From: Ostrea edulis
Taxonomy: Eukaryota
Reading direction: 5' to 3'
NCBI RefSeq assembly: GCF_947568905.1
Contig: NC_079168.1
Coordinates: 78,864,001 to 78,928,000 of the forward strand
DNA length: 64,000 nucleotides
Shown here piece after piece: positions 29,002 to 62,579 of this stretch; position 1 is the first letter of the stretch, and each line of letters starts with the position of its first letter. The translations under genes were made by a program, and so were the position numbers. Under the pieces are notes generated by a model, which worked only from the letters and a program-made list of their open reading frames with translations, ran no database searches and was not told where the DNA came from.

Positions 29002-29505
29002 TCAGTACCGCGGTCGCCGCCCACCTCTTTGATGAGAAGGACGGTAGGATAAATCATTAAATCCACCGGAAGTGAAACTTGAAGGTTGGTTTCCTCCACT
29101 CTGCCACTGAGATCCGCCGGGAAAATCTTGCTGGCCAAAATTTGTATCAAATCCTCCGTTATCCCAAGAGGAAGATGAGAATCCGCTTCCTTGTGAACCC
29201 CAACGTCCGGACCTATCGGAGGAAAATCCGTCGAAAGCAGAAACTCCCAACCCGGCGTTGTCAATTCCAAGATCGTTAGCTGAAGGGCTGACGCCTAAAG
29301 CTGGAGCTCCGATAAAATCAGCTGGAAAACCGCCAACATCTCCGATCTGATTTCCGAAGTTCACGCCATTGTTAAATTCTGACATCAATTGTCGTCTATC
29401 AGAGAAGAAATTGCCTCTGGGGGACATGAATCTATTGCCGCCGAATCGGTTGTGTACATGACAGGACGCGAAAGTCAGAAAGAGCAGACCTACTACCGCC
29501 TTCAT
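29002..29505 (-). CDS. Secreted Gly/Phe/Ser/Asp-rich low-complexity protein, 167 aa (cluster gene A)
   Basis: Signal peptide MKAVVGLLFLTFASC. An acceptor lies just before the ATG, and the basic tail is RPSHQRGGRRPRY. Confidence 0.85.
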   Translation of the reverse strand: MKAVVGLLFLTFASCHVHNRFGGNRFMSPRGNFFSDRRQLMSEFNNGVNFGNQIGDVGGFPADFIGAPALGVSPSANDLGIDNAGLGVSAFDGFSSDRSGRWGSQGSGFSSSSWDNGGFDTNFGQQDFPGGSQWQSGGNQPSSFTSGGFNDLSYRPSHQRGGRRPRY

Positions 29506-29787
29506 CTTCTGTTCTTGTAAAATAATTGAGAAAAACTGACGTAATCTTTGTACATGTGAAATAGATAAAATACATGTATTGCAATAAAAAAAAAACTATT
29601 CTGAATTTGTAATGTACCATGAATATAACGTTTTACTCAATTTTAAAACTACATTGTATTTGGGTTTTAAATCTAGAATTATCATGATAATAAAAAAAGA
29701 GTTATGATAACACCAGAGTGAGATTCCTCTTCGTAAAAGGTGCTGAAAAAATATCAAATTGGAGAAAATTTGAATGAAACAAAATAC

Positions 29788-29858
29788 CTTATTATCTTTC
29801 CTCAGAGGGGAGATTCCACGGTTCCAGGCTTAATAGGAGGTTCTAAGGAGGTTTTATA
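29788..29858 (-). promoter_or_regulatory. Putative TATA box (29852-29858) and short non-coding exon 1 of gene A
   Basis: Minus-strand GGTATAAAAC, then donor AAG|gtattt at 29788/29787. Confidence 0.5.
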
Positions 29859-30559
29859 CCGTTAACATCTATAAACATCATGGCGCACTCCGATCATCTG
29901 TTAACGATGTAATCTGATGGATGACAAGCATGATAATGTACTTACTTGGGCTTCCATAAAACACCCATTTTCCCTTCTTTGACCTTCTAAAAAATCTGCA
30001 TAATTCTATTTCTGAAGTAATTATCGTAAAATGACGAGGGTAAATAATAAACAGTGATGAATAGACTCGCCGACAAAGAAATGCATCGTGTTTTAAAGAT
30101 GTAAATATATCCATAAAGTGAGACAGACGGAAACATCGAACACGTGCGTGAATACATTCTTAAGCCTCCTAATATTTATATACTTAAAATTCATGCGGTT
30201 TTTTTTAAAATTCAAATTTACATTCGGGATGTATCTATTAATATTGTAATTACAAGAAGATAAAATTACAATTTTGTATAATCTATGACAATTGTATAAC
30301 AGTTGATTTCAATTTAGAAATTTTCCCCACAATAAGTTCGAAAGATTTATCATTATCATTTGTAAAGCTAAGGAGAATTTAAGTCAGTTCATTTAAAAGT
30401 TTCGGTAAAAACTGGGTCCTTCACATGGTGTATGACCGTGACTGTGCATCTTAAACGACGAGCACTACGTTTGCACACATTGCTCCTGTTGCATTTGCGC
30501 ACGGATTTCTTTAAGGACAATAGTTTTAAATCATTTAATATTTTTTGCTTAGATTGAGT

Positions 30560-30830
30560 TTGCTTAAGAAATTAATTTTATTCTCGAAAATACATGAGCT
30601 TATGAAATAGCATGCTTCATGAAGTTCTCATACGTTGCAGTTCATACCCTCATGCATTTTCATTAATGAAATTCATTTCTTCTATTTACATTCTACTTTT
30701 TACTACATTTTTGTCGAATTTCCAGCCATTAAAATAGACGTTCTATATTCATCAAGTAAGTCCTGTATTCATACACGCATTATTTACAACTGTAACGCGT
30801 TCCAAAAGCAAAAACATTGAGACTAAAAAT
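30560..30830 (+). repeat. Array-less relative of the element carrying the 50-bp array (1435-2000)
   Basis: Shares aagaaattaattt, aatgaaatt..tttcttctatttaca, tgtcgaa..ttaaaatagacgt and gcattatttacaactg in the same order. Confidence 0.65.
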
Positions 30831-31389
30831 AACTACACGTATATGGGTTTGGATAGTGTCATACATCCAGACTTTTCTGCAAAGTAGAATTTGTGCATCT
30901 GAAATGATGACGTCCCCTGATTTCTGATTTAAACCAGATAAAAATTCATTGTGTTCTATATAAAGTAGTCAATGCGCTAGTAATACATCTCGTCTGTTTT
31001 GATCAATGTGCGAAAATATAGCATCTATACGTGTAATTCAGGTCGTTTTACGCATTTATGCGATGTATTACGTCATATACATCCAAATGTAATTCATCCT
31101 TCAGAGGACGTGCATGTTCCTCAGAATGTACCGTGTCAGTTTCTCTACACATCAGAAAAATGGTGTTAAAATTACAAATATTCACTTACATGTTTGTTTA
31201 TCTTGACCTTTTCTCTGTGGCTTCATTTTTTGTCAGTTATATCCCTTTTGTCTATTGCAGTAAACAGATCATTTACTGCAGTGTATGTTACGTGACTATC
31301 AGGCAAGGAGAAAAAACTCTTTTCGATTCATACGTCTGTACACTTGGCATTACAGTTTGTACAATTTCAATTGGAATTTGTCTACTCAA

Positions 31390-32360: not shown

Positions 32361-32760
32361 CTAAACCTTCCTTTTATCTTTTTCTGTGAACACCTTGCAT
32401 TATAATTTTCGGTATATTCCTGGCTTTGCAATCTGCTCATATAACATCTCGTTTTGAACATCTGGTCTTAGAATTGTCCATACGGTACATATACCTTTCA
32501 ATTCTAACTCTGCTTTGTACTTCGTCTATGTGCATAGTACATGTAATGTGTAATTTGCCTGTGTACGCTTTCTTTGTAGTTTGTGTATGTTTACCTTACT
32601 TTTTAATTTGGCTATGTAACCTGTTTTTTTATTTGGCTATGTAACCTGTTTTTGTATTTGTCTATGTAACCTGTTTTTGTATTTGGCTATGTAACCTGTT
32701 TTTGTATTTGTCTATGAGCAATTTGTTTTCCCAACCAATTTTCATTCAACGTCCTTTTAT

Positions 32761-33299: not shown

Positions 33300-34017
33300 T
33301 ATGTACACCTGATTTTGTATTTTCTATGTACTCTTTGCTTTCTATTTTTCTATGTGCACCTGGATTTGTATTCAAGTACACCTGGGTTTATATTTTTCTT
33401 TATACACCTGGGTTTGTATTTTCTATGTACACTTTCCTTTGTATTTTTCTATGTACACCTGACTTTGTATTTTCTATGTACACTTTGCTTTGTTTTTTTG
33501 TATGTACATCTCTGCATTTGTCTATGATCACCTTGCTTTGTAATTCATCTGCAAACACCTTCCTCTGCATCTATGTATTGATGAAAATTCTTTGCAGGCA
33601 CTCATGTACATCTTGTTTTGCATTTGTTTGTGTACACTTTTTATTTGTCTATGCCCACCTTGTTTGATATTTCATAATTTTCATTGTATGCCTATTTTGC
33701 GATCAATGTGTATAAAAACAGAAAAGGTTCAGAGTCATGTTATTTATTACTAGACAACAAATCACACAAAACAAACTCGTGATCGCAGGACCATCTCACT
33801 GTCTGAACTGGAAGCTGTTAGCGACAATTAGTCTGTAATCAAATAAATAAATTCACGAATGAATAATCACAAACTTCGTTGAAAGGTTTGCAATTTAATG
33901 AAATTAGTAAGTGGTTTTGCGTTTTGAATTGAGGAAATGACTTTTGTAACCAAATAAATGTGTACAAAACTTACCAAAAAGGGAGCAAGAGGCGTCCGCT
34001 TTCTCCTGATTTGTGAG

Positions 34018-35814
34018 TTAATACCCGGATCTCCTTCTGGAGGGACGGCGTGGACGCATCCTTCGGACGTTCCTTCTCCTGGTTATAGTCGGTTGGGTGG
34101 CGTAATACTCATCTTGATTTACAGGGGGGTCAGTCACCACGGGTCTTCTGTAGACTGGACGGCGGGTGGGCTCAGGATAGCTGTATTTACGAGGGTATTT
34201 TGAACTATATCCGTACTTCTTCTTACTCCGCCTCTTCTCATATTTTCCATTGTCATATTTTCCATTATCGTATTTTCCATTGTCGTCTTTTCCATTGTCG
34301 TATGACTTTTTGGTGGGGTATTTTTTGTCCATGTCGTACTTGGTTTGTTTTCTTGGGACGTACTTATCGTAGGAGCCTTTCTGGTGTTTTTCTGGCATCT
34401 TATCGTACTTCGGCTGGTACTTGTCTACAGGTTGGTAATTATCAACCATTTTGTTGGCTTTTGTAGGGTAAGTATCCATATTCTTGTCTACGATGGGATA
34501 TTTGTCGTTCTGATCGAACCTGTTTGGGTAAACATCTAGTCCTCTGTCGTAGACCTTTGTTGGATAAGGCTCGTAAACCTTCGTGGGATATGGGTCAACT
34601 TTTTTGTCCATCTTGGATGGGTAGGTATCAAAGCCCTTCTCGAATTTGGCCGGATAAACGTCTGGGACTTTTTCGTACTTTTTTGATGGTTCATCATATT
34701 TTGGGAACTTGTCGTATCCATTGTCGTACTTACGTGGATATTTGTCCATAGTGTTATCGTACTTTGGTTGGTATTTATCAGCTGGATACTTATCGGCTGG
34801 ATATTTGTCCATTGGATATTTGTCCATTGGATATTTGTCAACTGGATATTTATCCACTGGATACTTATCGGCTGGATATTTGTCCATTGGATATTTGTCA
34901 ACTGGATATTTATCAACTGGATATTTATCCATGGGATACTTATCAACTGGGTATTTATCTACGGGATACTTATCAACTGGATATTTATCCACTGGATATT
35001 TCTCGGCTGGATATTTATCCACTGGATACTTCTCGGTTGGATATTTATCCACGGGATACTTATCAGCTGGATATTTGTCAACTGGATACTTATCGACTGG
35101 ATATTTGTCTACGGGATACTTATCAACTGGATATTTATCCACAGGATACTTTTCATCTGGATATTTGTTCACTGGATATTTGTCTGTCGGGTATTTTTCT
35201 ACTGGGTATTTATCCATTGGATATTTATCGTAGTTTGATGGATTATTTTCCGGATATTTACCGAAAGATTTGTCGGGATAACCATCCGTCTTCTTCGCAG
35301 GATACATGTCCATCTTTTTGTCCATCTGCCGAGGGTAAGCATCCATTTTCTTGTCCATTTTTGGCTGGTAGTTGGAAACATCTTTCTTCATTTGTCCCTG
35401 GCCAACAGGGGGTCTAGGTTGGTAGTTCGTATCCACAATGATGGCCTGGTTTTCGTCGTTGTCGAAAGCTCTAGTCTCAATAATACCAACTCCACTTTGG
35501 ACGGTTCCAAAATCGGTCTGGACATCAAATGGACGGCCGACGACATCGAGTCCTCGGACCTGAGCTACTGCGGTATCGAATCCTGGGGGCATCCCATTCT
35601 CAAGTCCCACAACAGCTACTGTATCGAATGTATTGGGTGTATTGGAGAATCCACTTCCGCCGTCTCTGGGAAACGGAACGTCAGCGGTTATACGCCCGCC
35701 AAAGTTATCTCCTGCGATCTGGAATGTGTCCACGCAATTTGGATCACGGGGATCACACACTTGCTGACAAAGAGTCGAGGATAGGAACAAGAGGGAGAGT
35801 ACTATCGTCAACAT
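34018..35814 (-). CDS. Secreted 598-aa Tyr/Lys/Asp/Pro repeat protein with about 30 tandem [DE]KYP[VMAT] pentapeptides (cluster gene B)
   Basis: Acceptor ttaacag|ATG and signal peptide MLTIVLSLLFLSSTLC. CDPRDPNC motif, 15-bp repeat at about 34770-35230, and tail RRMRPRRPSRRRSGY. Confidence 0.92.
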   Translation of the reverse strand: MLTIVLSLLFLSSTLCQQVCDPRDPNCVDTFQIAGDNFGGRITADVPFPRDGGSGFSNTPNTFDTVAVVGLENGMPPGFDTAVAQVRGLDVVGRPFDVQTDFGTVQSGVGIIETRAFDNDENQAIIVDTNYQPRPPVGQGQMKKDVSNYQPKMDKKMDAYPRQMDKKMDMYPAKKTDGYPDKSFGKYPENNPSNYDKYPMDKYPVEKYPTDKYPVNKYPDEKYPVDKYPVDKYPVDKYPVDKYPVDKYPADKYPVDKYPTEKYPVDKYPAEKYPVDKYPVDKYPVDKYPVDKYPMDKYPVDKYPVDKYPMDKYPADKYPVDKYPVDKYPMDKYPMDKYPADKYPADKYQPKYDNTMDKYPRKYDNGYDKFPKYDEPSKKYEKVPDVYPAKFEKGFDTYPSKMDKKVDPYPTKVYEPYPTKVYDRGLDVYPNRFDQNDKYPIVDKNMDTYPTKANKMVDNYQPVDKYQPKYDKMPEKHQKGSYDKYVPRKQTKYDMDKKYPTKKSYDNGKDDNGKYDNGKYDNGKYEKRRSKKKYGYSSKYPRKYSYPEPTRRPVYRRPVVTDPPVNQDEYYATQPTITRRRNVRRMRPRRPSRRRSGY

Positions 35815-36234
35815 CTGTTAAAATATTTAACAATGACTTAGATATGTCTACAACTGACCATTCATCGTTAAGAAAAAAGACTATTGTAAATTGTACTTTA
35901 TTTCACAGGGAATAACATTATAACATGGTGATTTTACAGTAATTAAATCATACTTCAATCTTACAAAGAAGATTCTCAGTCATCATTATTTGGTGAATAG
36001 TTTACATAATTAATCAAAGTAGAAGTTAATACGGTAACCTACATTTTTGGAATGCATGCTGAATTATGCTTTATCCGTTTATTTTATCATTCAGTTAAAA
36101 ACTTGATTATACATACTGATATCTAGTTTCAAGATTAATTATAAAACATTGGTTTGTTTTTAAATATATATGCATATGCATAAATTCATTTTTACCAATT
36201 CACGATCTGTTTCACTTCCACACCTAATTCTTAC

Positions 36235-36297
36235 CTCTCTTCAGCTCGGTGAACTGCTTTTCCGATGACTTGTGAAACTGTTGACGCCTTTTATATA
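36235..36297 (-). promoter_or_regulatory. TATA box (36289-36297) and non-coding exon 1 of gene B
   Basis: Minus-strand TATATAAAAGG, then donor GAG|gtaaga at 36235/36234. Confidence 0.7.
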
Positions 36298-38799
36298 AGC
36301 TGTATAACTATGAATATTATTAGCTTGGAAATAAAACATACATCTGTAAAACGACCAAAGATCACCACTGTGTTTATCACCAATAATTGATATCAAATAT
36401 GAAATTTAAGAGCACGTGAGAATCAAATATGCATATGAGCAACCGAACATGTCAAATGTGAAAAGTAAAGCTTCTAGATGGCAACCTTAGCGACCACCTG
36501 CGGCTCATGAAATGTTGGTTATTAAGTTTTCCATCTAAATCAGGATCATACGTCAATAAATTTACGGAAGGTGTTTATTCCTAATGATGTCTCTTACCTC
36601 GAGTGAGGTCTTATTAAGGAGAAATACTGCTAAGCAATGTTACAGGTGCGCTATACCCATGGCTGCGTGTGAAGTCCGACGATGTCATTCATGAATTTGT
36701 CTTAGTCAGGTATTCAAGCTTTGTTCTAATCAACATATATCGTTGGGGGGGGGGGGGGGTATTTATTACCTGTCATTTACTCTGTAAACGATACTTGACA
36801 AATAAACATCATATGTAAAATGAAATACATGTAGATAAGTGACTTCAGCATTCTTGTACATTCAAAAATGGTATAATACATGTACAAAACTCGTAGGGGA
36901 AAACTATTGAAAATGTTCTTTTATAAAAAAATTTAAAGGCGGTGAATTCTTATTTAGTTGCCTCGACAGGAACACCCATCAGTATGACGATAATCTAAAC
37001 ATTGTCGACAACACAAAACAGGTCTGGTACATTATACACATACAGACATGCAGGACTGTACAGCTTATGATTGGTTGTTAAGATTTGCCTCGATTTTTTT
37101 TTTTAAAAGAGATGGGAACTAAGAGGCCTATATGTGTTTATGCCTTTTCCATCTAAATTTTAAAAGGCCGAGATATTTTCACAGGAAAGTGGTGTGACCT
37201 AATGTCAACGGGTATTCGAATACATATGTATAAAATAATTAAATCCAAGTGGTATGATAGGGCTGAGTCAATTGAATTCAATTATGACTTATATGAGTTT
37301 AGAAAATAGGGGTTTAAACAAAAAAGAGAGACTTTAAATGGGTTTTTTTCTATTACCTAAACTTAGACAATAGAAAACGTGTTTGACATATTTCATTTTG
37401 TTTTTAAAATACTATTTTCTATGAAGCAATCTATATGTAAACAAAAACATGGCACGAGCCTTGTTTACATAATAAAGAAATGTGAGTGCTGTATCTCACT
37501 TGTAACTAAAAAACTGATATTCAAATTTTGGTTGACCATTAGAAATACTTTAGTGAAGCTTTGTAAACAATGGAAATGGAAAAATAAAATTTGAATTTTG
37601 TTTTTAGCTCAAATCGTTTCCATGCCCCTTTAGGGTTAATCCGCCCTTGCCAAGTTAGATGAATCGGACAATAGCGATGTTACTATAACTTTAATATTGG
37701 GGGTATGCCGCTCGCCCTGTCCGTTGGTGTTGAGCCTTGGCGGTTTCTATTTGCTCGCAAATCTATGTAAACTACGACGGCGAACTATTTGTCATCACAA
37801 CCCACACTTCTTAACAAACATTTTTTTTCTTTCAAAAATTATGAAAACGAAAACTAGTTATGCTTGAGTGCCGTGTGGAATGTAATTTGTTCCAAAGATC
37901 TCTCAATTAAGTCCAAGAGAGTGAGGAAAATTCATTTTGAGTTACGTGAGGAGGGGTTGATATATTTCAATTTTTGAACATCATAGAAAATTTAGAAGTC
38001 CGTTACTCTGTTAGTAATACTATATTGGTACTTATTAAAACCAAGCAAAATAAAACAAATATACATTCAACCTATGCATCCATTTTTTATTCTTATTTAT
38101 TTATTTACTTATTATTATTGTATCAAGCGTTCTTAAATTTTCTTTCTATGTACATCGATGTCAAAGCTCAAAATGGTCTAACTGTTGAACATGAAGATTA
38201 ACCGATATAATCGGTCTTGTGTAATCCGGGGTTGGGGGGGATTTGCGTATCAATTTACTGATTTCTCTTTTTTTTTCTAGCCCTTTCTGACTTTTCTGAC
38301 TATAGGAACAAAAAATTGAAAGAAACCGAATGACTTCTATAGTTAAATATTGAAAATATTTCATATCAGTAGATTATAAAAATCTTGCACAACTGCACTT
38401 TGTAGTGAACATCCATTCCAGTCTAATTCAGAAGTTAGAGAACTGAGTTGACAAACTTTGTCAGGGACGAATCGAAACCAACAGAAACGGTATATCTCCC
38501 CTGTAAGACCTCATTTTATTTGGAGTGTTTTAATAGCTATTGGAATGGTGTGCCCATGACTTTATTCTAAAAGAATATCAAAAATGTAAAGATGGATTAC
38601 TGCCATGTACTAGATGTGTCTAAGTGTTGAAAAATTGTGGGATATCATAAAGTTATTATTTTATTTATTTACTTTTTCTATGATTTTGGTTGTGTTTTTT
38701 TTAAATTTTCGTTTTTATTTTTATTTACTTTTCTTAGACAAGATTTTAATAACATAGGAGAGAGAAATTCTATAAGATCCCTGATAAAACGGAGATGAA

Positions 38800-39206
38800 C
38801 CCTTACCAAAATGTAAAGTTTGCTGCAAATTTGCCGCAAGTTTGCTGCAAGTTTGCGGCAAACAAATCAGTGTGCCAGAGCTGTTTGCCAGAAGTGTGCA
38901 GCTAATGCCGCTAGCGGCATACAGTGTGCCACTAGCAGCACACAGTGTGCCACTAGTGGCACAGTGTGCCAGAAGTGCGCCACAACTTTTCCTAAATGAA
39001 ACAGTGTGCCAGAAGTGCACCACAACTTTTTCTTTGGTATTCAGAATCAAAACTGTGTGCCAGAAGTGCACCACAACTTTTTCTTTAGTATTCAGAATCA
39101 AAACTGTGTGCCGGAAGTGCACCACAACTTTTTCTTTGGTATTCAGAATCGTGTGCCGGAAGTTCACAACTTTTTCCTTAAAATTTTAGAACTGAAATAG
39201 CAAGGG
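38800..39206. mobile_element. Repeat element with ccctt/aaggg ends and internal gtgtgccagaagtg repeats
   Basis: Same family as 48925-49369, in opposite orientation (cccttaccaaaat vs attttggtaaggg). Confidence 0.65.
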
Positions 39207-39931: not shown

Positions 39932-40519
39932 CTTTTCTTTATTTACATGTATATCTGAACATTGATTACAATTCAGATACTGGATTTGTGAGTTGAAATT
40001 AATCAAATGAGAGTGGTAAAAATTCACCTTTATATCGTATAATTTATCCAGGTACGTTATTCTGGTGTGTGGAATGCTAATTGATACTAAGTTAGAATAA
40101 TCTAAGCTGTATACCAAAGTTGGTCTTCATGGAACTTTACGGCTCTATGCATCCCAAATAGAGATCGGGTTCAATGCGTCGGGTGTGGGATTCACTCAAT
40201 ATTATATGCTGAGCGCGAAAGTTGATATCAACAGACGCCATGAATTTATCACAATAAATACGTTACCTTTATAAATTTAGATATTCACCTGCTTGCAGTC
40301 TTGTATCGGAAAAAAACCATGTAAACAAAAAAGCACCCTTCGTGACCCGCCACCTCTGACATGCTCAGAAACCAACATCCGGTATCATCTTTTCTTTTCC
40401 GCCGTTGTGGAGTGCAGTCACGTTTTTCTCGAGGAGGAAAAGAATTTTTTCTACTTGCTAATTTTGGCTAAGTATTGCATGGTAGTTTTTGTTATTACTT
40501 TATTACATTATTAAGCATT

Positions 40520-42186
40520 ATGGCGAATGAAGGTGAAAATGTTAAATTACCTTTTATTGCTGTAGAGGGAGAGTACTGGGACTCTGTTGACTCTAGAAGT
40601 TTTGGTCCCATGGAATCTGACCCTTTTCTTTCTTATGGGAATGTCATGGATTCCCCAGGAATTCCTCCTACCCCGGTTACTTCGGTAGGTCAAATTAGAG
40701 CTACATCTACTATTACGCGACCTCCTGGTAGTCCGGTGGCTAGTTCTCGCCCTGAGAGTTTTCCTTCGGGTAATCGTAGGGAGACGTTTTATCGGTCTAG
40801 GTGGCCAGCTAGATTTCCTCATCCCATGTATTCTGTGCCACCTTATCCCTACTCGACTCAACCTGTGTGGACAGGGCAAGGTTTTGTTAGTAAACCAAAC
40901 TTAATGGAGTCCTCCAATAAGGACGAAATTAAATGTTTGGTTTCCTCTATTCAGAAACTGGAGGCTTCTATTTCTTCAAAATTTGTGACAGTGGAACGTA
41001 GACTAGATTTGATTGAAAAAAGCAAATCAGCTACGTCCCCCACTGTTCCTGGGGCTGCTCTTGTCACCCCTCGGCCCGTTTTTGATAATAAAGCGGACGA
41101 GGAGGTTGACTCATTATCTTTGGCTCCCAGTAGTCAAGAGGCATCTTTTCTCCGGTTCCTTCAGTCGATGAAGTTGGGCTTTCTCAGGAGCAACTTCCAG
41201 TAGAGAATCTCACTCTGAAAGCTAAAGTGTACGCAATTCGTAGAGAATTGTCAGGTCCCGATTCTTTAGTTTCTCCTCCCAGGAGTTCTCACAAACCTTC
41301 TGATTTTCAGTCCTGCTCTGGTCTTGTGAGAGATTCTTCTAAGTCGTATGCTTCTTTTCCCGAGTCTAGTCATTTTAAATCTGCATTGGCTTCCATTAAT
41401 TCTCATCTTGTCGACGATCAGATGTCCTCCAATAAGGCCTCTAATTTAGTTAGACAAAATCTGGCTTTTAGTACATCTTCTTTCCCTGGTAAGGTTAGAA
41501 TGAAGTATTTTGATATTCATGATGTTTCCTTGGGAAAATCTCAACCTGTTTTTGATAAGACTTTTTCTAATCTTCTTGGTGCTAAGTCTTCTGAGGGGGT
41601 CAAGTTATCTCAGACTTCTTATTCTAGGTCGGAGAACAATCTTCGGGGTGTTGCCGCAGCTTTACAGTATGTGGAGCACTTTCTTGCTGCTGCAGGTGCC
41701 TCTCTTAAAGATAAGGGCGAAGAATTTGATGATGTTCGTTCTTTTCTTCTCCAAGTAGATAGATGTCTTTGCACTTCTCAGCTCTTGAATCTTGGCACTA
41801 TTGCCAATTTTTCTTTAGCTAGGAGACAAGAGATTCTTAAAAAATCTAACGTCTCTGAGTTTCTTAAAGACAACCTACTTTTTTCTCCTCTTCATAAAGA
41901 GCAGTTATTTGGCATCTCTTTACGCAAATTACAAGAGGAATTACACAAAGAACCTCCTACTGTTAAAGTAGATGTACAACTCAACAATGGTAGTTCTAGG
42001 CGTGTTTCTTGTTCTTCTAAATCAGACTCTTCTAGAAGTAAGTCGCAAGGTGCTACTAAATCTGGCTCTTCTCTGCAAGGTTCAAATAATCTTAAGAGAA
42101 GTAATGAGCATCGTTCTTTCCCATCGGCTTCTGGATCTAATAATAAAAAACCCAAAGTAGCCAAGGGTAAGAAATCTCAGTTTTGA
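40520..42186 (+). pseudogene. DIRS gag-like ORF1, frameshift near 41147
   Basis: ORF 40520-41203 continues in another frame (SPVPSVDEV..KAKVYAIRREL) to 42186. It is positioned 5' of RT. Confidence 0.7.
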
Positions 42187-42255
42187 TGCCTCCCCCCTCC
42201 TGTAGCACAATCCACTCTTTCCGAGGAAGTAGGTGTTCCCTTTCCTCATCTTCCT

Positions 42256-44295
42256 GTGGGAGGACGCCTCTCTCTTTTTCTTCCTCATTGGTCCCGTCTC
42301 ATTTCGGACAAATGGGTTCTTTCTGTGCTACGGAGGGGTTTAGAGCTTCAATTTCGAGAACAGCCTCCTCTCTCTGCGGTTCCTCTGGAATTTTCTATGA
42401 CCAGAGACCCGTGGAAAAATCTGTTGTTACAAGAGGAAGTGTCTCTACTTCTCCAAAAGAATGTATTGGAAGAAGTAAGTCCACCTCTAGGTTGGGGGTT
42501 CTACTCTCGTCTCTTTCTTGTACCCAAAAAGAATGGACAAATGAGACCTGTGTTGGACCTCTCTTTTCTGAATCAGTATCTGGTGATTCCACATTTCAAA
42601 ATGGAGACCAACAGGTCGATCAGAACCTCTCTCCATACAGGGATGTGGACGTCTTCTTTAAATCTGACGGATGCTTATTTTCATGTCCCTATAGCTCCGG
42701 CTTATCGGAAGTTTCTTCGTCTGGTCTGGGAGGGCAAGGTATATGCTTTCAGGGCAATGCCTTTTGGCCTATCTACTGCTCCACTAGTGTTCACAAAAAT
42801 TTTTCAAACAGTGGTTGCGTATCTACACTCCCAGTCCATTTTCATCCATACATATCTAGACGATTCTCTGATCAAGAATTTTTCTTTCAACCTTCTTCAT
42901 CAACATACTCATCGAGTTATTTATCTTCTGTTGAAGCTGGGTTTCCTTATTTCTTGGGAAAAATCAGAGATAGTTCCCAGTCAGAGTTTCATTTTCCTAG
43001 GGGAACAATTTCGAACAGATCTTGGGATAGTTCTTCCTCCAGAGGAGAAATTTCTCAAGCTTCAGTATCTGTTGGATCAACTACTTTCAGCCAAACAGGC
43101 TTCAGCTCGCTAGTTTCTACAACTGATAGGTTTTCTGATTTCTCTGATGGACATAGTACCTTTAGGTCGTCTTCATACTCGCCTCATTCAGTGGTATCTT
43201 CTGGAATTTTGGGTACCAGCCTCACAACAGTGGGAAGCTGTTATTCCCATTCTTCCCAGATTGTATCCTCATCTTCTGTGGTGGTCAGTGAGAGAGAATG
43301 TTATGATAGGTTGCTCGCTAGACCCCCCAGTTCCTTCTATGACCCTGTTTACAGATGCTTCTCTGACAGGCTGGGGAGCTACCCTGGAAGGCAGAGAGGC
43401 ATCAGGTATATGGTCCGGTCTCCAGTTGACAGAACACATCAATTTACTGGAGATGCGGGCTGTTCTTCTGGCATTGAAACACTTTTCCCAATTTGTTCAG
43501 GGTCAATCTCTGATGATAGCCACAGACAATACAACAGTAGTGGCTTATCTGCAGAATCAGGGCGGCACACATTCTCAGTCTCTTTACCTTCTGTGCAAAG
43601 AAATTCTGTTGTTTTGCCGTTCCCTGGGAATTCGCTTGTCAGTCAGGCATGTTCCTGGCAATCTGAATCTAGTAGCGGATGCTCTCTCAAGGTCACTGCA
43701 TCCAGTGAATACAGAATGGGAGTTACATCCAGCAGTCTTTCAGGAGATCTGTCTCAAGTGGGATCGTCCTCATATAGACCTCTTTGCTACGCATCTGAAT
43801 TGCAAACTGCCAACGTTTGTCTCTCCGATTCCAGACAACAAAGCTTTAGCAGTGGATGCAATGTCTTTCGATTGGAAGGGGATGTTTTCTTACATGTTTC
43901 CTCCTTTTCGCCTCCTTCCCAAGATTTTACACAAAATCAGGGTAGAAATTTGCAAGACCATTCTTATTGCTCCAGCATGGCCAAAACAATCTTGGTTTCC
44001 AGATCTTCTTCAACTGTGTTGTGCGAGACCAATTCTGCTTCCTCTCAGGAAAGATCTTTTGTCTCAATTCAAAGGCAGGAAAGTTCATCAGAATCTTTCC
44101 AACCTCCATCTACACGCATGGTTACTGTCAGGGAATCTCTCAGACAGGATGGCTTTTCTGACAGAGCAGCCAAACGTATCTCTAGTTCAGTCAGAAAATC
44201 TACAGGAGCAATTTATGACTCTAAGTGGAACATCTTCTGTTCTTGGTGTCGTTCAAAGGAAATTGATCCTCTCGCAGTTACTGTCCAACAGTTAG
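42256..44295 (+). pseudogene. DIRS RT/RNase H/methyltransferase-like ORF with one premature TAG (43111-43113)
   Basis: YSRLFLVPKK, RPVLDL, MPFGLSTAP, YLDD, FLG; RH TDAS..GWGA, HINLLE, TDN, ADALSR; MT-like IDLFA, YMFPPF, APAWPKQSWF. Confidence 0.92.
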
Positions 44296-48670: not shown

Positions 48671-48924
48671 TTTCTTTTTTTCTTTTCTTTTTTTGTTGAA
48701 AAATTCTACCTTTAATTTGTCATTTTTCCAGTATGTTTCTACTGTTGTTCCTATGATAGATAACATATTTTACAAGAACCTGGTCATTTCTGTTTTTGAA
48801 TCTCTCTTTTTTTTAATTAGTATTTTTGAATATGTTAATTACTTGATATGCCATTGTTCTTGAAATTATATTAATTGAATTATTATTGTGTTTTTGTTTT
48901 GTAATATGACAGTTTATATAGGAT

Positions 48925-49369
48925 CCCTTAATTTCGAGCAGATAGTGCCAGAAGTGTGCCGCAAGTTTGCCGCAAACTGTGTGCCGGAAGTGTGCAGCAA
49001 GAGCGTGCCGCAAGTTTGCCGCAAACTGTGTGCCAGAGGAAAAATTTGCATACGAAAAGTATACTTGCGGCAAATATGCCGCACACTGTGTGCCAGAAGT
49101 GTGTGCCGCAAGTTTGCGCAAACTGTGTGCCAGAGGAAAAATTTGCATACGAAAAGTATACTTGCGGCAAATATGCCGCACACTGTGTGCCAGAAGTGTG
49201 CAGCAAGTGTGTGCTGCAACTGTGCCACAAACTGTGTGCCAGAGGAAAAATTTGCATACGAAAAGTATACTTGCGGCAAATGTGCCGCAACTAGTTGCGG
49301 CAAACTTGCCGCAAATGCGCTGCAAATTTGCAGCAACTGTGTGCCAGAGGGCTTATATTTTGGTAAGGG
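48925..49369. mobile_element. Repeat element with ccctta/taaggg ends and internal tandem/inverted gtgtgcc repeats, immediately upstream of the C1q ATG
   Basis: Family match to 38800-39206. Confidence 0.65.
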
Positions 49370-49437
49370 AAATACGAGAATCTTTATCAGTCTGAACTGA
49401 CCTCATTACATTGACGGAAATATCATACCAGTGAAGA

Positions 49438-50349
49438 ATGCGGGTCAGTATTATAATTTGTGTATTGGTGAATATTTGGGGTATGGCAGTTAGCGAAGAC
49501 AGGGTGTACACGGAAGAATTCGTAATGAACCTTGTTCAGAGGATGGATCGTCTGGAACAGGAATTATCTCTGTTCAAGAAAGAAAGCATTGCCAACATCC
49601 GGGAACTTCAGACCAAACTTCGACAGTCTAGCCAGAGAGCAGACGAGCTGGAGAGCAGGTTGGAGAGGCACCAGGCCGTTGTATCGAGATGGGTGAGTGA
49701 CCATGAAGGCACCATGGATGAAGTTAATTCACCTGAATCGGAAAAGCAAAATTCGAGCAACACAAATCAAGGTTGGAACTAAATCTGATCGCATCATACT
49801 GTAATTCTATCTACCAGGATTTGATAATTGCGGAGGGCAAAATATGAGAATGTCACTCTATGTATCGTTCAATCTTTTTTATGTTTTTTTTTTTTAGATC
49901 GTATCCAAAGACTTTTGATTCCCTCAATTCCCGACACTACAACCCAATCGAGCACCCTTCCTGTTGCTTTCTATGCGCACGCATCTGATCATCAGACGGG
50001 ATTGGGTACTGGACAGACTATTCACTACAAAACAGTTATCACTAACGCTGGAAATGGATTCGATTCCAAAATCGGGATATTTAAGGCACCTGCAGCAGGG
50101 TACTACTATTTCGCGACAACTTTGGTCAGTGGTCAAGGCGAGACTGTGAGAAGTAGCATCGTTCACAATAGCCAAGACGTTGCACATGTGTTCGCGGGAA
50201 ATGAAGGGACATACGGGTCTGGTTCTAACTCTGTTGTCCTCTATTTGAATGTAAATGATGACGTGTGGACCAGGGTATCTATTGACACAAATGCTCATGT
50301 ATATGCCGATTCGTGGTGTACATTCTCTGGGTTTCTGATTTCAAATTAA
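49438..50349 (+). CDS. Secreted C1q-domain-containing protein with coiled coil, about 261 aa; exons 49438-49771 and 49898-50349
   Basis: Signal peptide and coiled coil. Phase-1 intron CAAG|gttgga...tttag|AT. gC1q motifs VAFYA, VITNAGNGFD..IGIFKAP..GYYYF, GSNSVVLYL..NDDVW and TFSGFLI. Confidence 0.92.
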
Positions 50350-51678: not shown

Positions 51679-54600
51679 TTAGTAACCACGCCTCAGTACA
51701 GCACCAAGTCGACTTCTTTTGGGGCTCAAGGACAAACGTCTTCGTGCAACATACTGCTTCCGGTAAGGCCGCGCGTTTGAGGCAAGGACAATCTTGTAAG
51801 TTGGTGAACGGGGGACTGCATTTATGTATACTCGCCGATCAATACTGACACGAGCTGGAGGGACATTGACGTATGATGGCGCTGTCTGCAGTGGCTGACC
51901 TTGTGTCAACAGAAAGACGTTGTCGTCATCCTCTGCGGCATACCCAATAATGCCACATCCGGGACAGTTCAAGATCTGACATTTCACCATGGCAACAAGG
52001 ACGCAGAGGAGCACCAAGACGAAATCCACATCCTGGAAAAAATGTCAAATATGAATGAATATTGTCGCATAATTTTCATAGTAAGCTTGCTATCCTGGAA
52101 ACAATTTTCGTAAAGAAAAAAAATTGCTCAAAGAATTGCATTTATAAATATGTTGTCAATAATAACATTTTTCGATAAAAGCACTGACTGTTCAACTCCA
52201 TATAAATATCTGTTATTTACAAGGTATGAATATACATGTATATAAAGAATTATGTTGTTTGTATTATGTGGGGGAATATAAACAACGGGAACGGGAGGGG
52301 ATGATTTCTGCATATATCTGTAATTATATATTCTACATGCATGTGATTATAAATCTTACATGTTCTCATATATCCTATATATATTTTAATACAAACAATT
52401 TAAGACATTCGTTCTTTAGACAATACTCACGTTCTAAAATAAGGATCATACAGATACTTGACCCCCTCTTCGCATTCATTCTGCTTTATATTAAAGGACA
52501 CAACGCATGTTTCTAAACTTTTTCATTTTTTCAGCAAAATTAATTCTTTTTATGCCTAAAACTACTTTAAATGTGTTTTAAATGAAATATTTTGCGTAGT
52601 TTTCGAGTTTGAAAGCGATGAAATTCAAATCTTGCGATATGCATATTTTTTTCCCCCGCTAGTTTACGCGCCATTATGTGTGACGTCATATGCGCCCTCG
52701 GGTTTGAAAACATCTATTAGCCATTTCATAAACAGATTAGATTTAATCGACAAAAAACCAATTATTACGTTAACAGATTGTAAATGATAATGCACTAAGA
52801 TATTTTGTGCCGTGCTCGGGTGTACTAGTTGTCGGTAGAAAGGATTTAGACTGAGTATTTTCCAATTTTTCGAAGGAAGGTACGAGAAAAAACACGTGAA
52901 TAATTTTTTTGTTGGAGCAAGAACTTTACCTTAAAGAACACACCCAGTCACCTTTTCAAAAACCGCTTGGACAGAGACCCAGATAAACTGCGAGAAAATG
53001 GATATATCGAAGCTATAAGCACTGGTAGGCCTATAGCATACATTCTGTTTTGCTCTTCAAATTCAATACACACTCGGATCAACTGACCTTCACCTTGTAA
53101 CAATATATATCGACATTAAAGATACAAAATAATTGAACTTTTAATTATACAAATAATAGAATATTGTATTCCCTAACTTTAAATTGAATTATAAAATTAT
53201 TTCCGTATTGAACTCGTAGCATCTTGAGTGCGTCAGTATAACGCCGTGCTCCCACTTTGTATATTCCTAAAGACGTGCAGATCACAATTCAAAAATAGTA
53301 ATAAGATTGCTTTATCAAAATAAAATAATGTGATTACCACTTTAAATTTGATTATTTTTATTGATTTGCATGTGTGTTGTCTTTTTCTTTCTTTCCGAAA
53401 TGCACTCGTGACAATAGCTTGGCATAGGGCCTAGTTGTCAACAAATTAACGTATCATAATTTGTCTAATCCAAAAATAAATAATGATTGCACTGTTTACT
53501 TTAGAGAAACAGCGCCAATTACAGATGTATAAAGGAATAATATCACCAAACAGTTTATAGACAGCGACCCATATAAACATTTACTCACAATATTGCCGAT
53601 TTCATACACGCTTTACTCGCTATATTTGGGTATTTACATCGTTATATGTGTGCATTGGTGGCGAAAACATATAAAACTCGGAAAATTTGTTAACATCGAT
53701 TTAAATGTTACCCATGATAAATAAATTAGGCCCCTAAAAGTTGAGTTTTTAATAATATTTCGCAGTACTTTCACAATCCGAAGGGTGCATGTGACGTCAC
53801 TGTACCACGTGACTACCTACCTAATTAACTAGACTTTTTGAAATCGGGGCTTAGATTTAAGTCTGTATTGTGGTTAATTATCGCAAAATTTCGGCGAACG
53901 AACTATTAGAATTAATTACTATAAGCATAAAGAAGACGAAATGCATGTAATGTTGTATACTTTGAAAACATGAGATGTGTTCTTTAAGGAAAATGTGAAC
54001 CTAATATAGAAAGAAAAAAGTTTTTAAAAAATTACACGGTAACTTAATGACATGGTTGTCTAGCAACACATCAAATACAGTATAGTAATTCTTTTGAAAT
54101 AACACACAAACAGAACGACACTTTGGTATCGTTATAAACTGCTCGTGTACATGTATATTCCACCTTTTAAGAAAGAGGAAATGACACCATTTTATAGTCC
54201 ATGGGTTTTTATTTTCATTAGCAGCGGACATATTCCTTGGTAATAAAGCATAATTTGTCATATTTTGGAATTAACGATAATTCATTGACATTTTATATGT
54301 AGCTTTTGAAAGAATTGCATATCTTGTTGTTTTCGGTGTAAACTGAAGTGGATCATTTTATACTAGCACTTTAATTTACCTAGCAACTAATTATCCCCTA
54401 GGCAACGAAATATTTTACAGCACATCTTCACCTATTTGATAGTTTGTTAAGTAACGGTCAAATTAAACATACGAATGATTTCCATCAAAAGTCGTGTTTA
54501 GTACCTTTTGATACTAGCGACACTGTGAGAAAGTAAATAAACATGCACAATGCATGTATCTATTTCCTGTCCGTGCTACTGTAGACCATGCTAACAAGCA

Positions 54601-56646: not shown

Positions 56647-56776
56647 NNNNNNNNNNNNNNNNNNNNNNNNNNNNNNNNNNNNNNNNNNNNNNNNNNNNNN
56701 NNNNNNNNNNNNNNNNNNNNNNNNNNNNNNNNNNNNNNNNNNNNNNNNNNNNNNNNNNNNNNNNNNNNNNNNNNNT
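56647..56776. other. Assembly gap (130 N)
   Basis: Run of n. Confidence 1.
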
Positions 56777-59102: not shown

Positions 59103-59124
59103 ACACACACACACACACACACAC

Positions 59125-59178: not shown

Positions 59179-59181
<3 letters not shown>

Positions 59182-59842: not shown

Positions 59843-59989
59843 AAACATTCTTTTTGAAGAATTTATCGATGTGTAAACTCCTGACATTTTACTCACGAAC
59901 TGAATAAAAGCGCGAAGCACTTTTATGTTAAGTTTGTGAGTAAAATGTCCGGAGTTTACACATCGATAAATTCTTCAAAAAGAATGTTT
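59843..59989. repeat. Palindrome with about 58-bp arms
   Basis: aaacattctttttgaagaatttatcgatgtgtaaactcc...ggagtttacacatcgataaattcttcaaaaagaatgttt. Confidence 0.9.
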
Positions 59990-60855
59990 GATTCTTATAA
60001 TTCCAATTCATTCACTTTATTAAAAATTGCAAAAATTTGAATAGTTTCCCCGCACTATGTTATTTGTTTTCAGGCGTGTATGAATACATCGCGTTCTCGG
60101 ATATATTGATGTATAAACTCTTGTTCAGCTTTATTTTTGTCCAATCAAAACAATTGTAATAAATAACATTGGAATTATACTACAATACAAAGTCGTTATA
60201 TAGAGTGAGACCCTATATTGTACGTCGTTACGAAATACTACGTCTAATAAGTTATAAAGATCGAGACACTTTAAAGTCGTTATAATGAAATACTAAGTCG
60301 TTATGACGGAATATTATGTCGTAATACTAAGTCATTATAAGATGCTATATGCGACATGGCTATATTCATATCTTACTCAATACTATTAGGCGTTTGTATT
60401 CCCGCCGACTGAATTAAATACAAATTTAAATAACTGTCTAGAATTATGCAAAAAAAGTTTATTGAATAAATAAAAACAAAATGTACAAAACACAAAACTG
60501 CCTAGAGCACCAAGAAATCCCCCATTCTTAACGTATATTCTCGTCCAGAGTTCTCGGCCAAGTCTGCTTACTTGGAGATTTGCTATGGACAGCTTCACTG
60601 CAATAATCTATCAAAATCAAAAAATATAGCTAAAGAGAATCATTCAAGTTAAAAAGTAATCCAACAAAATAAGGATCAAATAACCTTGCCTATCTATCCA
60701 TGAAGCTTAACCTATCATGGCAAAAAGTTCACAATTGTATCAAATATTTTTTTTTAAGTTTTAGCAATGTTACATAAATTGATATATGTCGTAATGATAA
60801 AGAGGTATTGATTATGCATAATAACTGGTGATATTATTGTACATTACCTGTTAAT

Positions 60856-62214
60856 TTAGTATCCTGAGCTAATTCGTCTAACTGGTCTGATTGGCATATT
60901 TCTTGGGTAATTTGAAACTCTACCATGTGACCTTGGAAAGTATGGCATTGGTCTTGGCATTCCAAATCTTGGGTACGGTCTTTTCATCGGTAAGATGCTT
61001 GGTCGTCTGCGTTTGTATATTGGACTTCCTTTTCCAAATCGGGGTTGGTATGATTTTCCGAAACTTGGAGCATAGCCCATGGATCTTCCTTTACCGAATC
61101 CTCTGCCAATATTACCCCCGAGTCCCAGACCTCCACCAATTCCCAGCCCACCACCAATACCCTTTCCTCCGATTCTTCGGCCACCGATGATTCCCTTTCC
61201 GCCTCCGATTCTGCGAGGTCCTCCTCCAATTCCAATTCCCTTTCCTCGAGAACCCCAGCCACGACCACCTCCAAACCCTTTACCAAATTTTCTGTTTTGT
61301 CCAAAGCCTCTGTTGTTACTGATAATAGGACCTAGTGATCCACCAAATTTCCCGCCTCCGACTCCTATACCAAAATCTTTGTTTTGCCCAAAGACACCAC
61401 CGCCAACCATGGGACCACCAGCTATTCCTCCTTGGAAACCAATTCCTCCATCAAATCCTCCAACTGAGGGTCCTCCAATCATACTCCCCTTTCCTCCGTC
61501 AAATCCTCCAACTGAGGGTCCTCCAATCATACTCCCCTTTCCTCCGTCAAATCCTCCAGAAAAGCTTCCTTTTCCTCCGTCAAATCCTCCAGAAAAGCTT
61601 CCTTTTCCTCCATCAAATCCTCCAGAAAAGCTTCCTTTTCCTCCGTCGAATCCTCCAGAAAAGCTTCCTTTTCCTCCATCAAATCCTCCAATGAAACCAC
61701 CTCCACCGCCAAAGTTTCTTCCGACGGCCGCCCCACCAATAATTCCTCCCTTTCCTTCATCAAAACTGCCTCCTGCTCCGAGAAAAGATCCATCAATGCC
61801 CGAGTTCACATCGAAACCAGGTTCAAAACCACCGCCTGCGCCCAGATTGGCATCCAGACCAATGTTAGAGTCAAGACTAAGCCCTCTAGTGGCAAATGCG
61901 ACACCGCTCAGATCGTTCTGGAATCCATTATCGAATCCGTTATCAGCCAATCCGACATCCGTACCGGGAAAATCGTTGACTACTCCCCCGTCAAATCCGA
62001 ATTCAAGTTTTGGTTCCACAAAATTGTTGAGTCCCTGTCCGAACCCGACATTTGGAGCTTGATCGAACCCAATGGAGTTGATAAATCCTCCCCTGCCGCC
62101 CCCTCCGCCCAGACTTCCGCTGTTCCCGAAGGAATCACATCCCAGGTCCCCGGGGTTACAGGGCTGGAGTCCGTAACAATAGGCGGCGCTCAGGAGAATC
62201 AGTACAACCTTCAT
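60856..62214 (-). CDS. Secreted Gly-rich repeat protein, about 452 aa (shematrin-like composition; cluster gene D)
   Basis: Acceptor tgttgtttag|G ATG at 62214, so the listed upstream Met is probably intronic. Signal MKVVLILLSAAYCYG, CNPGDLGC, GGFDGGKGS repeats, and tail PIRPVRRISSGY. Confidence 0.9.
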   Translation of the reverse strand: MKVVLILLSAAYCYGLQPCNPGDLGCDSFGNSGSLGGGGGRGGFINSIGFDQAPNVGFGQGLNNFVEPKLEFGFDGGVVNDFPGTDVGLADNGFDNGFQNDLSGVAFATRGLSLDSNIGLDANLGAGGGFEPGFDVNSGIDGSFLGAGGSFDEGKGGIIGGAAVGRNFGGGGGFIGGFDGGKGSFSGGFDGGKGSFSGGFDGGKGSFSGGFDGGKGSFSGGFDGGKGSMIGGPSVGGFDGGKGSMIGGPSVGGFDGGIGFQGGIAGGPMVGGGVFGQNKDFGIGVGGGKFGGSLGPIISNNRGFGQNRKFGKGFGGGRGWGSRGKGIGIGGGPRRIGGGKGIIGGRRIGGKGIGGGLGIGGGLGLGGNIGRGFGKGRSMGYAPSFGKSYQPRFGKGSPIYKRRRPSILPMKRPYPRFGMPRPMPYFPRSHGRVSNYPRNMPIRPVRRISSGY

Positions 62215-62521
62215 CCTAAACAACAGCAGAAATTTATCAGCTCTTCTAGTGCTCATTTAAAAACGTAACTCTGAATGCAAGATAAAAATTCGGGGCAAAG
62301 ACTTCAGATTTTTTGGGGGCTAGAAACAGTTTGATGTTACCATCATCAAACAAAGTTGTTGGGTTTTTTTTTTCCCCGGCTATACAAATATACTTGTCTT
62401 GCCAAATAATTATCATGTATAACAAGGCAAAAATATCGTTCTTTGTGAATAATTACTAAGTTGTTTTTTTTTTATCTGATAAGACAGGCCAATAATGGAT
62501 GAATAGCACGTCCTCGCTTAC

Positions 62522-62579
62522 CTCGTTCGTTGAAAATTTGCCGGGTCTGTCATATGGGATATCGGGGCCTGTTTATATA
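62522..62579 (-). promoter_or_regulatory. TATA box (62572-62579) and non-coding exon 1 of gene D
   Basis: Minus-strand CTATATAAAC, then donor GAG|gtaagc at 62522/62521. Confidence 0.7.

What the first reader, a model, noticed from the sequence alone, without database searches (positions are those of the whole stretch)
29002..62579. Cluster of four co-oriented secreted low-complexity genes sharing an Arg-rich, Tyr-terminated tail: candidate uncharacterised shell/adhesive secretion system
Seen: four minus-strand genes across about 33 kb, each with a signal peptide, acidic residues concentrated ahead of a strongly basic C-terminus, and a final Tyr (GGRRPRY, RRRSGY, LRRGY, RRISSGY). Their middles are unrelated (G/F/S-rich, KYP repeats, short, GGFDGGKGS repeats). 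Known: pearl-oyster shematrins are Gly-rich secreted shell proteins ending in basic RKKKY-like motifs, and molluscan matrix genes often cluster and diverge fast in their repeats. Inference: this is a co-expressed family of charge-polarised matrix proteins whose shared tail could be a cross-linking or assembly signal. I do not recognise any of them as a named protein.
Basis: partly seen in the sequence, partly recalled or inferred. Interest (0 to 1): 0.8.

Follow-up and report, generated by a model that had tools for sequence, protein, structure and literature searches.

The report
Oyster cluster of secreted disordered proteins
Four neighbouring oyster genes encode secreted, floppy proteins with acidic fronts and arginine-rich ends finishing in tyrosine; they look like building-material proteins such as pearl-oyster shematrins, but only two appear related, one may be broken, and their tissue and job are untested.

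Summary
The four minus-strand ORFs are real at the stated places: G1 29002-29505, G2 34018-35814, G3 51679-52029, G4 60856-62214. All end in an Arg-rich stretch closed by Tyr. Each has a TATA box, a tiny non-coding first exon, and an intron ending 0-8 nt before the ATG, with the whole CDS in one exon.

The "shared tail" is shared composition plus a terminal [S/R]GY or RY. It is not an alignable module (shuffle z about 0). Only G2 and G4 look like old paralogues:
- a Cys-x6-Cys head (z 3-4.3);
- the same SGY end;
- an intron just after the stop.

G4 is conserved in other oysters, tail included, at dN/dS about 0.2. G2 (30 × [D/E]KYP[V/M/A/T]) and G3 have no detectable relatives; G1 was looked up only in its own 90 %-identity cluster. 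G3 has no in-frame ATG and may be decaying.

The promoters are unrelated and no RNA data were available, so co-expression and a "system" are unsupported. The assembly gap is intergenic but separates G4 from the other three.

The most likely role is extracellular structural or cross-linked matrix, analogous but not homologous to shematrin/KRMP. An antimicrobial-precursor reading is not excluded. Other windows of this genome were noted earlier for secreted-protein clusters with different conserved tails.

The parts
29002..29858 (-). G1 gene. TATAAAA 29858-29852; non-coding exon 1 ending 29788; inferred intron 29787-29514; CDS 29505-29002 (167 aa; G/S/F/D/N-rich; ends GGRRPRY; stop TGA).
   Evidence: The same protein is on DNA contigs of at least 5 other samples of the species. 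Those contigs carry 13 non-coding SNP sites against 1 synonymous site in the CDS. Splice sites are inferred from consensus only.
33750..36297 (-). G2 gene. TATATAAAA 36297-36289; exon 1 ending 36235; intron 36234-35815, ending right at the ATG; CDS 35814-34018 (598 aa); probable 3'UTR intron 33974-33833; AATAAA near 33750. The protein has a signal peptide, then Gln-Gln-Val, then Cys-x6-Cys, an acidic head, 30 contiguous [DE]KYP[VMAT] units (residues 196-345), a Lys/Tyr/Pro-rich stretch and an Arg-rich tail ending RRRSGY.
   Evidence: K-Y-P is invariant in all 30 units while synonymous codons vary (AAA/AAG 21:9, GAT/GAC 17:8). No relatives were found. The Atlas model has pLDDT 0.33.
51679..52490 (-). 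G3 locus. TATAAAG 52490-52484 at the edge of a high-copy repeat (52484-52700); candidate exon 1 ending 52431; acceptor at 52033; ATG 52031-52029, 2 nt out of frame with the ORF 52029-51679 (116 codons from GTG; ends LRRGY). A doubtful or decaying gene.
60450..62579 (-). G4 gene. TATATAAA 62579-62572; exon 1 ending 62522; intron 62521-62216; CDS 62214-60856 (452 aa); 3'UTR intron 60847-60598; conserved 3' exon 60597 to about 60450 with AATAAA. The protein has a signal peptide, Cys-x6-Cys, a conserved acidic G/F/D/N head, a species-specific GGFDGGKGS repeat expansion, and a basic Pro/Arg/Tyr tail ending RRISSGY.
62580..62900 (-). G4 promoter. About 330 nt is conserved across three oyster lineages, with invariant blocks such as ATATCCAATTAAT, GATGAATCAG and ATTTCCGGAC.
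   Evidence: The blocks are absent from the G1-G3 promoters.
56647..56775 (.). Assembly gap in non-coding DNA between G3 and G4.
   Evidence: It was not filled. No gene of the set crosses it.

Best explanation
The interval holds four separate, lineage-restricted oyster genes for secreted, intrinsically disordered proteins. They are built on one plan: signal peptide, acidic front, variable low-complexity middle, and a basic Pro/Arg/Tyr-rich end whose last residue is Tyr.

G2 and G4 are probably old paralogues whose middles were replaced by different repeats. G1 shares only the plan. G3 shares the plan but has lost its in-frame start and may be decaying.

I infer, without having shown it, that they are extracellular structural proteins of the shell organic matrix, periostracum, ligament or cement. 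On that view the acidic heads and basic tails drive head-to-tail electrostatic assembly or coacervation. The Tyr residues next to Lys/Arg/Pro would then be oxidised by tyrosinase or peroxidase to cross-link the material. These Tyr residues are the 30 KYP units of G2 and the tail-restricted Tyr of G1 and G4. The small N-terminal Cys pair would allow a disulfide loop or link.

This works like shematrin/KRMP and mussel fp-1-type proteins but is not a member of those families.
For: Shown directly:
- ORFs, tails and charge polarity.
- The same gene architecture in all four.
- G4 orthologues in Saccostrea cucullata and S. echinata and in a third oyster known only from Logan contigs. The C-terminus is kept (RRI[GS]SGY; RRMASGY in the Logan copy), dN/dS is 0.19-0.28 in head, middle and tail, and the acylphosphatase neighbour is syntenic.
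- G2 versus G4 heads: z 3.0-4.3, P 0.002-0.015 against shuffles; hhalign P 0.005.
- Both G2 and G4 have exactly two mature Cys spaced x6, the same SGY end, and an intron just after the stop.
- Disorder: AF2 pLDDT 33 for G4 and Atlas pLDDT 0.33 for G2.
- K-Y-P is invariant across 30 units despite synonymous drift, which points to protein-level constraint.
- Tyr in G1 and G4 is confined to the basic tails.

From the literature: unrelated Pinctada matrix families (shematrins, KRMPs) share a basic C-terminal signature ending in Tyr (PMC3896809). Repetitive low-complexity, lineage-specific secreted proteins dominate mantle secretomes (PMC5400390).
Against: - No expression or proteomic evidence of any kind; no RNA run was on record.
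- The tails are not alignable.
- The promoters are unrelated.
- G2 and G3 have no detectable relatives, and G1's wider relatives were not searched, so conservation of their tails cannot be tested.
- G3 lacks an in-frame ATG.
- The neighbouring genes are immune-type (C1q, thaumatin).
- The DKYPV unit is charge-neutral, unlike the basic mussel fp-1.
Confidence: 0.45

Rival explanations
1. Coincident neighbours. These are four unrelated, fast-evolving secreted disordered proteins with different jobs. The tail likeness is only composition plus a terminal Tyr, a common look among the many oyster secreted low-complexity genes, and it carries no shared function.
For: - Tail alignments score no better than shuffles.
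- There is no nucleotide similarity among the loci.
- The promoters are unrelated.
- G1 and G3 show no homology to G4 by profile comparison.
- Other windows of this genome carry several different clusters of secreted proteins with other kinds of tail (unchecked notes).
Against: - Four of the five host genes in 33 kb end in Tyr after an Arg run.
- All four share the same unusual exon plan.
- G2 and G4 share the head motif, the SGY end and the 3'UTR intron.
- The G4 tail is under purifying selection.
Confidence: 0.3
2. Host-defence precursors. The acidic front is a neutralising pro-region, and the cationic Pro/Arg/Tyr-rich end is released at dibasic sites as an antimicrobial peptide, as in the oyster proline-rich peptide Cg-Prp.
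For: - The Cg-Prp precursor is a signal peptide, an anionic pro-region and a cationic Pro/Arg peptide (PMC3390580).
- The last 50-70 residues are 38-46 % Pro+Arg in G2 and G4, with many dibasic sites.
- G3 has a DRR site ahead of a +12 tail.
- C1q and thaumatin-like genes lie nearby.
Against: - Only one Pro-Arg-Pro motif occurs in all four tails.
- The proteins are 10-30 times longer than Cg-Prp precursors.
- In G4 the acidic head is the best conserved part (dN/dS 0.19), which is not what a mere pro-piece would show.
- The 30 KYP units of G2 have no counterpart in antimicrobial precursors.
Confidence: 0.15
3. G3 is not a working gene. It is either a pseudogene that lost its start through a 2-nt change at the ATG, or a chance ORF.
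For: - The ATG is 2 nt out of frame, and this is confirmed in independent DNA contigs.
- No relatives appear in a word search of 5.8 billion proteins.
- About two ORFs of this length are expected by chance in the window.
- A high-copy repeat abuts the putative promoter.
- There is no counterpart within 10 kb downstream of the Saccostrea G4 orthologue.
Against: - The frame encodes a textbook signal peptide, an acidic patch and a basic Tyr-ended tail.
- The acceptor-G-ATG layout copies G4.
- An upstream ATG (52475) with a GTATGA donor would restore the frame in a spliced mRNA, although it lies upstream of the expected transcription start.
Confidence: 0.5

Closest known systems
Shematrins and KRMPs of pearl oysters (Pinctada)
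   Same: Both are secreted, repetitive low-complexity proteins with no globular domain. Both are lineage-restricted. In both, different families share a short basic C-terminus ending in Tyr (PMC3896809, PMC5400390).
   Different: - No sequence homology was found (one search returned only ostreid hits).
- Here the end is Arg-rich with [S/R]GY or RPRY, not RKKKY-type.
- Only G4 is Gly-rich, and it is poor in Tyr outside the tail.
- There is no Lys/Trp head as in KRMP.
- Shell location is untested. The literature treats shematrins as confined to pearl oysters.
Mussel foot protein-1-type coating or adhesive proteins (tandem short Tyr/Lys/Pro repeats modified to DOPA)
   Same: G2 has 30 tandem pentapeptides with invariant Lys-Tyr-Pro, and its mature composition is 12-14 % each of K, D, P and Y. 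The comparison with mussel repeats rests on my own knowledge; I did not retrieve a paper for it.
   Different: Each G2 unit carries an Asp and so is charge-neutral. G2 also has an acidic head and an Arg tail. DOPA, the tissue of origin and homology are all untested.
Cg-Prp, the oyster proline-rich antimicrobial peptide precursor
   Same: Both have a signal peptide, an anionic region and a cationic Pro/Arg-rich C-terminus (PMC3390580).
   Different: The size differs greatly: a 16-18-residue peptide against 40-70-residue tails on proteins of 116-598 aa. Pro-Arg-Pro motifs are almost absent here, and the acidic domain of G4 is conserved.

Membership tests
Shematrin | Signal peptide with a secreted Gly-rich (XGnX, Gly-Tyr) repeat body | tested here: inconclusive
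   All four have signal-like starts. Only G4 is Gly-rich (32.6 % Gly) and it has 2 % Tyr, all of it in the tail. G1-G3 do not fit.
Shematrin | C-terminal RKKKY / RRKKY / RRRKY / PRKKY-type signature (PMC3896809) | tested here: not met
   The ends are RRPRY, RRRSGY, LRRGY and RRISSGY. They are Arg-based, and three have Gly (Ser-Gly in two) between the basic run and Tyr.
Shematrin | Sequence homology to Pinctada shematrins | tested here: not met
   The word search with G4 returned only four ostreid uncharacterised proteins. Only the 8000 candidates sharing most words were scored, so the test is limited.
Shematrin | Expression in the mantle edge and presence in the prismatic shell layer | not testable with these tools
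   No RNA run holds the locus. No proteome could be searched.
KRMP | Lys/Trp-rich domain directly after the signal peptide, followed by a Gly/Tyr-rich stretch | tested here: not met
   The mature N-termini are acidic with a Cys pair (G2, G4), a CxxC (G3), or His/Arg/Phe-rich (G1).
Mussel fp-1-type DOPA protein | Long tandem array of short Tyr/Lys/Pro repeats | tested here: met
   G2 only: 30 contiguous [DE]KYP[VMAT] units. TRF finds a 15-nt period with 30.5 copies.
Mussel fp-1-type DOPA protein | Tyr to DOPA modification and origin in a foot or adhesive gland | not testable with these tools
   This needs mass spectrometry and tissue RNA.
Proline-rich antimicrobial peptide precursor (Cg-Prp-like) | Signal peptide, anionic pro-region and a short cationic peptide with Pro-Arg-Pro motifs, 25-50 % Pro+Arg (PMC3390580) | tested here: inconclusive
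   The charge layout is met. Pro+Arg is 38-46 % in the G2 and G4 tails, but only one PRP motif occurs overall and the sizes are far larger.
Extensin_1 (PF02095) | Score above Pfam's gathering cut-off | tested here: not met
   G2 scores 95.9 bits against a cut-off of 105. This is a repeat-composition match.

The most novel reading that the evidence does not exclude
The Arg/Pro/Tyr-rich end closed by (Ser/Arg)-Gly-Tyr is an ostreid counterpart, evolved independently, of the basic Tyr-terminated signature of pearl-oyster shematrins and KRMPs. On this reading it is a portable C-terminal assembly and cross-linking tag placed on unrelated disordered bodies. G2, with its charge-neutral DKYPV polyampholyte array, would be an undescribed oyster DOPA-type coating or cement protein.
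Probability: 0.2. Interest if true: 0.65.

Novelty: new variant of a known kind. Interest (0 to 1): 0.4.

Why it matters
Oyster cement, periostracum and shell-matrix proteins are poorly known at sequence level. Basic, Tyr-ended tails have so far been treated as a pearl-oyster peculiarity.

If these genes are matrix components, three things follow:
- G2 would offer a simple Lys-Tyr-Pro polyampholyte for wet-adhesion and coacervation studies.
- G4 would be a conserved ostreid marker with a sharply conserved promoter.
- Recurrence of a basic Tyr-terminated end in unrelated families would argue that it is a functional assembly tag.

If they are not, this is one more cluster of fast-evolving secreted disordered proteins, which is ordinary for bivalve genomes.

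Tried and rejected
- **Pfam on all four proteins:** nothing except a sub-threshold Extensin_1 repeat match for G2.
- **ESM Atlas look-alikes for G2, G4 and G3:** scores of 0.76-0.83, which is chance level. The neighbours were arthropod cuticle/GYR-type and keratin/hornerin-like clusters, so these are leads only.
- **Full HMMER search with the G2 head:** three hits, all giant bacterial repeat proteins or low-complexity sequences. I rejected them as spurious.
- **Word searches for the G2 head and for G3:** none.
- **hhalign of the G4 family against G1 and G3:** nothing.
- **Alignment of tails against shuffles:** no signal.
- **G1 middle against the G4 head:** not significant; the best of three tests gave P 0.03.
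- **blastn among the four loci, and a search for G4's conserved promoter blocks in the other promoters:** nothing.
- **tblastn of G1-G3 on 21 kb around the Saccostrea G4 orthologues:** no counterparts. I could not walk further because no gene is called downstream.
- **RNA evidence:** the run search returned only DNA holders, so the read-laying run was used to check the G3 start.
- **Alternative G3 starts:** the ATG at 52449 in the candidate first exon, spliced to the acceptor at 52033, gives a short, unrelated frame. Splicing from an ATG at 52475 would restore the frame, but that ATG lies upstream of the expected transcription start.
- **Literature:** I found no paper naming any of these proteins.
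Full report
**What is there**

Mechanical ORF listing shows four minus-strand ORFs in a GC-poor (36 %) window:
- G1 29002-29505, 167 aa.
- G2 34018-35814, 598 aa.
- G3 51679-52029, 116 codons.
- G4, whose true start is the ATG at 62214, 452 aa.

They end GGRRPRY, RRRSGY, LRRGY and RRISSGY. G2, G3 and G4 run from acidic fronts to strongly basic ends; net charge of the last 40 residues is +8, +12 and +8. G1 is basic at both ends. ORFs of 167 codons or more are not expected by chance here, but about two of 116 codons are.

The only other host gene inside the interval is a two-exon C1q gene on the other strand (49438-50349). A tyrosine-recombinase-type retroelement with RT and RNase H lies at about 40475-45212.

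The assembly gap 56647-56775 lies in AT-rich non-coding DNA next to a 39-nt tandem repeat, about 4 kb from both G3 and G4. No gene crosses it. It does mean that G4's adjacency to the other three rests on a scaffold join. I did not try to fill it.

All four loci have the same exon plan:
- a TATA box;
- about 55-65 nt further on, a consensus donor, which gives a tiny non-coding first exon;
- an intron of 270-420 nt;
- an acceptor 0-8 nt before the start codon;
- the whole CDS in one exon.

G4 and G2 also have a donor just after the stop, at 8 nt and 43 nt. This implies a 3'UTR intron. In G4 it is conserved in three other oyster sequences, together with the downstream 3' exon and its AATAAA. All splice sites are inferred from consensus and conservation, not from RNA.

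**G4**

A word search found orthologues:
- Saccostrea cucullata (XP_062569903.1, 'uncharacterized protein LOC134231969');
- S. echinata;
- a third oyster known only from Logan DNA contigs.

The alignment shows a conserved signal peptide, a Cys pair, a conserved acidic G/F/D/N-rich head and a variable Gly-rich middle. The GGFDGGKGSFS units are a recent expansion private to this genome, at 95-98 % nucleotide identity. The basic Pro/Arg/Tyr tail is conserved and ends RRI[GS]SGY, or RRMASGY in the Logan copy.

Against Saccostrea, dS is about 1 and dN/dS is 0.19 (head), 0.27 (middle) and 0.21-0.26 (tail). An acylphosphatase gene lies upstream in both genomes. About 330 nt of promoter is conserved with invariant blocks. 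AlphaFold2 with the family alignment gives pLDDT 33 throughout, so the protein is predicted to be disordered.

**G2**

Residues 196-345 are 30 contiguous [DE]KYP[VMAT] units. K-Y-P is invariant while synonymous positions vary, and TRF reports only 77 % nucleotide matches. The array is therefore old and kept at protein level. The mature protein is 12-14 % each of Lys, Asp, Pro and Tyr.

Two searches with its non-repetitive head found no true relatives:
- the word search;
- an exhaustive HMMER scan of 1.84 billion representatives, whose three hits are bacterial repeat or low-complexity proteins.

**G1**

The exact protein is on DNA contigs of several other samples of the species, collinear with the window. 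Those contigs show 13 SNP sites in 1448 non-coding nt against one synonymous site in 504 coding nt. This is suggestive only, because the contigs were retrieved by exact protein match. I ran no wider homology search for G1.

**G3**

The signal-peptide frame begins at GTG. The ATG placed just after the acceptor, exactly as in G4, is 2 nt out of frame and opens a 15-codon dead end. Contigs from four DNA runs of two studies agree with the window at this point.

Three further points weigh against it. No relatives were found. Its putative promoter abuts a very high-copy repeat. No counterpart lies within 10 kb downstream of the Saccostrea G4 orthologues. I rate it as even odds between a decaying gene and a working gene with an unusual start.

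**Are they one family?**

| Test | Result |
|---|---|
| Last 70 residues, local alignment against composition-preserving shuffles | z between -1.1 and +1.5; not alignable |
| Nucleotide similarity among the four loci | none |
| G4 family profile against G1 and G3 | nothing |
| G2 against G4 family, first 60 mature residues | z 3.3-4.3 |
| G2 against G4 family, whole head, collinear over about 110 residues | z 3.0-3.6 |
| hhalign, G4 family against G2 | P 0.005 |

G2 and G4 also each have exactly two mature Cys in C-[DN]-P-x-D-x-x-C, the same final SGY, and the post-stop intron. I read G2 and G4 as probable ancient paralogues with replaced middles. G1 and G3 share only the plan.

**Function**

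No RNA run held the locus, so tissue, stage and co-expression are unknown. G4's conserved promoter blocks are absent from the other promoters, which argues weakly against a common control.

Several features point to an extracellular structural or cross-linked material:
- disorder;
- charge blocks;
- Tyr placed beside Lys/Arg/Pro, with all mature Tyr of G1 and G4 in the tails;
- the N-terminal Cys pair;
- the KYP array.

The literature shows that unrelated Pinctada matrix families share a basic, Tyr-terminated C-terminus (PMC3896809). It also describes such repetitive proteins as young and lineage-specific, with shematrins confined to pearl oysters (PMC5400390). That makes this an analogue, not a member. 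Names such as 'shematrin-like' already exist in Crassostrea annotation and mantle transcriptomes (PMC13465682), but G4's orthologues are not so named.

A real rival is a Cg-Prp-like defence precursor, with an anionic pro-region followed by a cationic Pro/Arg peptide (PMC3390580). The tails are 38-46 % Pro+Arg in G2 and G4, but they carry only one Pro-Arg-Pro motif. The acidic head of G4 is also its best conserved part.

**Verdict**

- 'Family with a shared tail module', 'co-expressed' and 'secretion system' are not shown.
- This is a new variant of a known kind (lineage-restricted secreted repetitive proteins with basic Tyr-ended tails), of moderate interest.
- G2 is the most attractive single protein to test.

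Earlier notes of this scan call the genome the flat oyster and list other clusters of secreted proteins with different conserved tails. I did not verify the species. My own evidence shows only an ostreid at dS of about 1 from Saccostrea.

Noticed in passing
window 62580-62900 (minus strand); L006 9380-9712; L008 1-330: The G4 promoter is far better conserved than synonymous sites of its own CDS. Invariant blocks include homeodomain-like TAAT sites (ATATCCAATTAAT, ATTAATGTC), an AP-1-like TGAATCA and an ETS-like TTTCCGGA. The factor assignments are my inference.
   Followed up: partly
window 52484-52700: A very high-copy repeat, with summed contig depth 10^4-10^6 against about 3-90 in the flanks, lies directly upstream of G3.
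   Followed up: no
window 40475-45212 (+): A retroelement with RT (PF00078), RNase H-like (PF17917) and a C-terminal ORF part that looks like a tyrosine recombinase (DIRS-like; the last point is by eye, with no Pfam hit). It is inserted between G2 and the C1q gene.
   Followed up: partly
window 49438-50349 (+): A two-exon gene with a signal peptide plus coiled-coil exon and a C1q domain exon (PF00386, E 1.6e-23). It is the only non-cluster host gene inside the interval.
   Followed up: partly
window 10999-11640 and 25007-25360 (+): Two thaumatin-family copies (PF00314, E 2.8e-70 for the first).
   Followed up: no
window 19729-21294 (+): An intact 521-aa Mutator-like transposase ORF (PF20700, E 2.7e-47) in a GC-rich island.
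   Followed up: no
window 38721-39189 and 48813-49400: Two related satellite-like arrays (units of about 50-100 nt, rich in GTGTGCC.GCAA) flank the retroelement/C1q segment. They produce long mechanical ORFs in several frames.
   Followed up: no
window 63252-63385; L006 6602-6745: An acylphosphatase exon upstream of G4, syntenic with Saccostrea. It is a useful anchor for synteny walks.
   Followed up: partly
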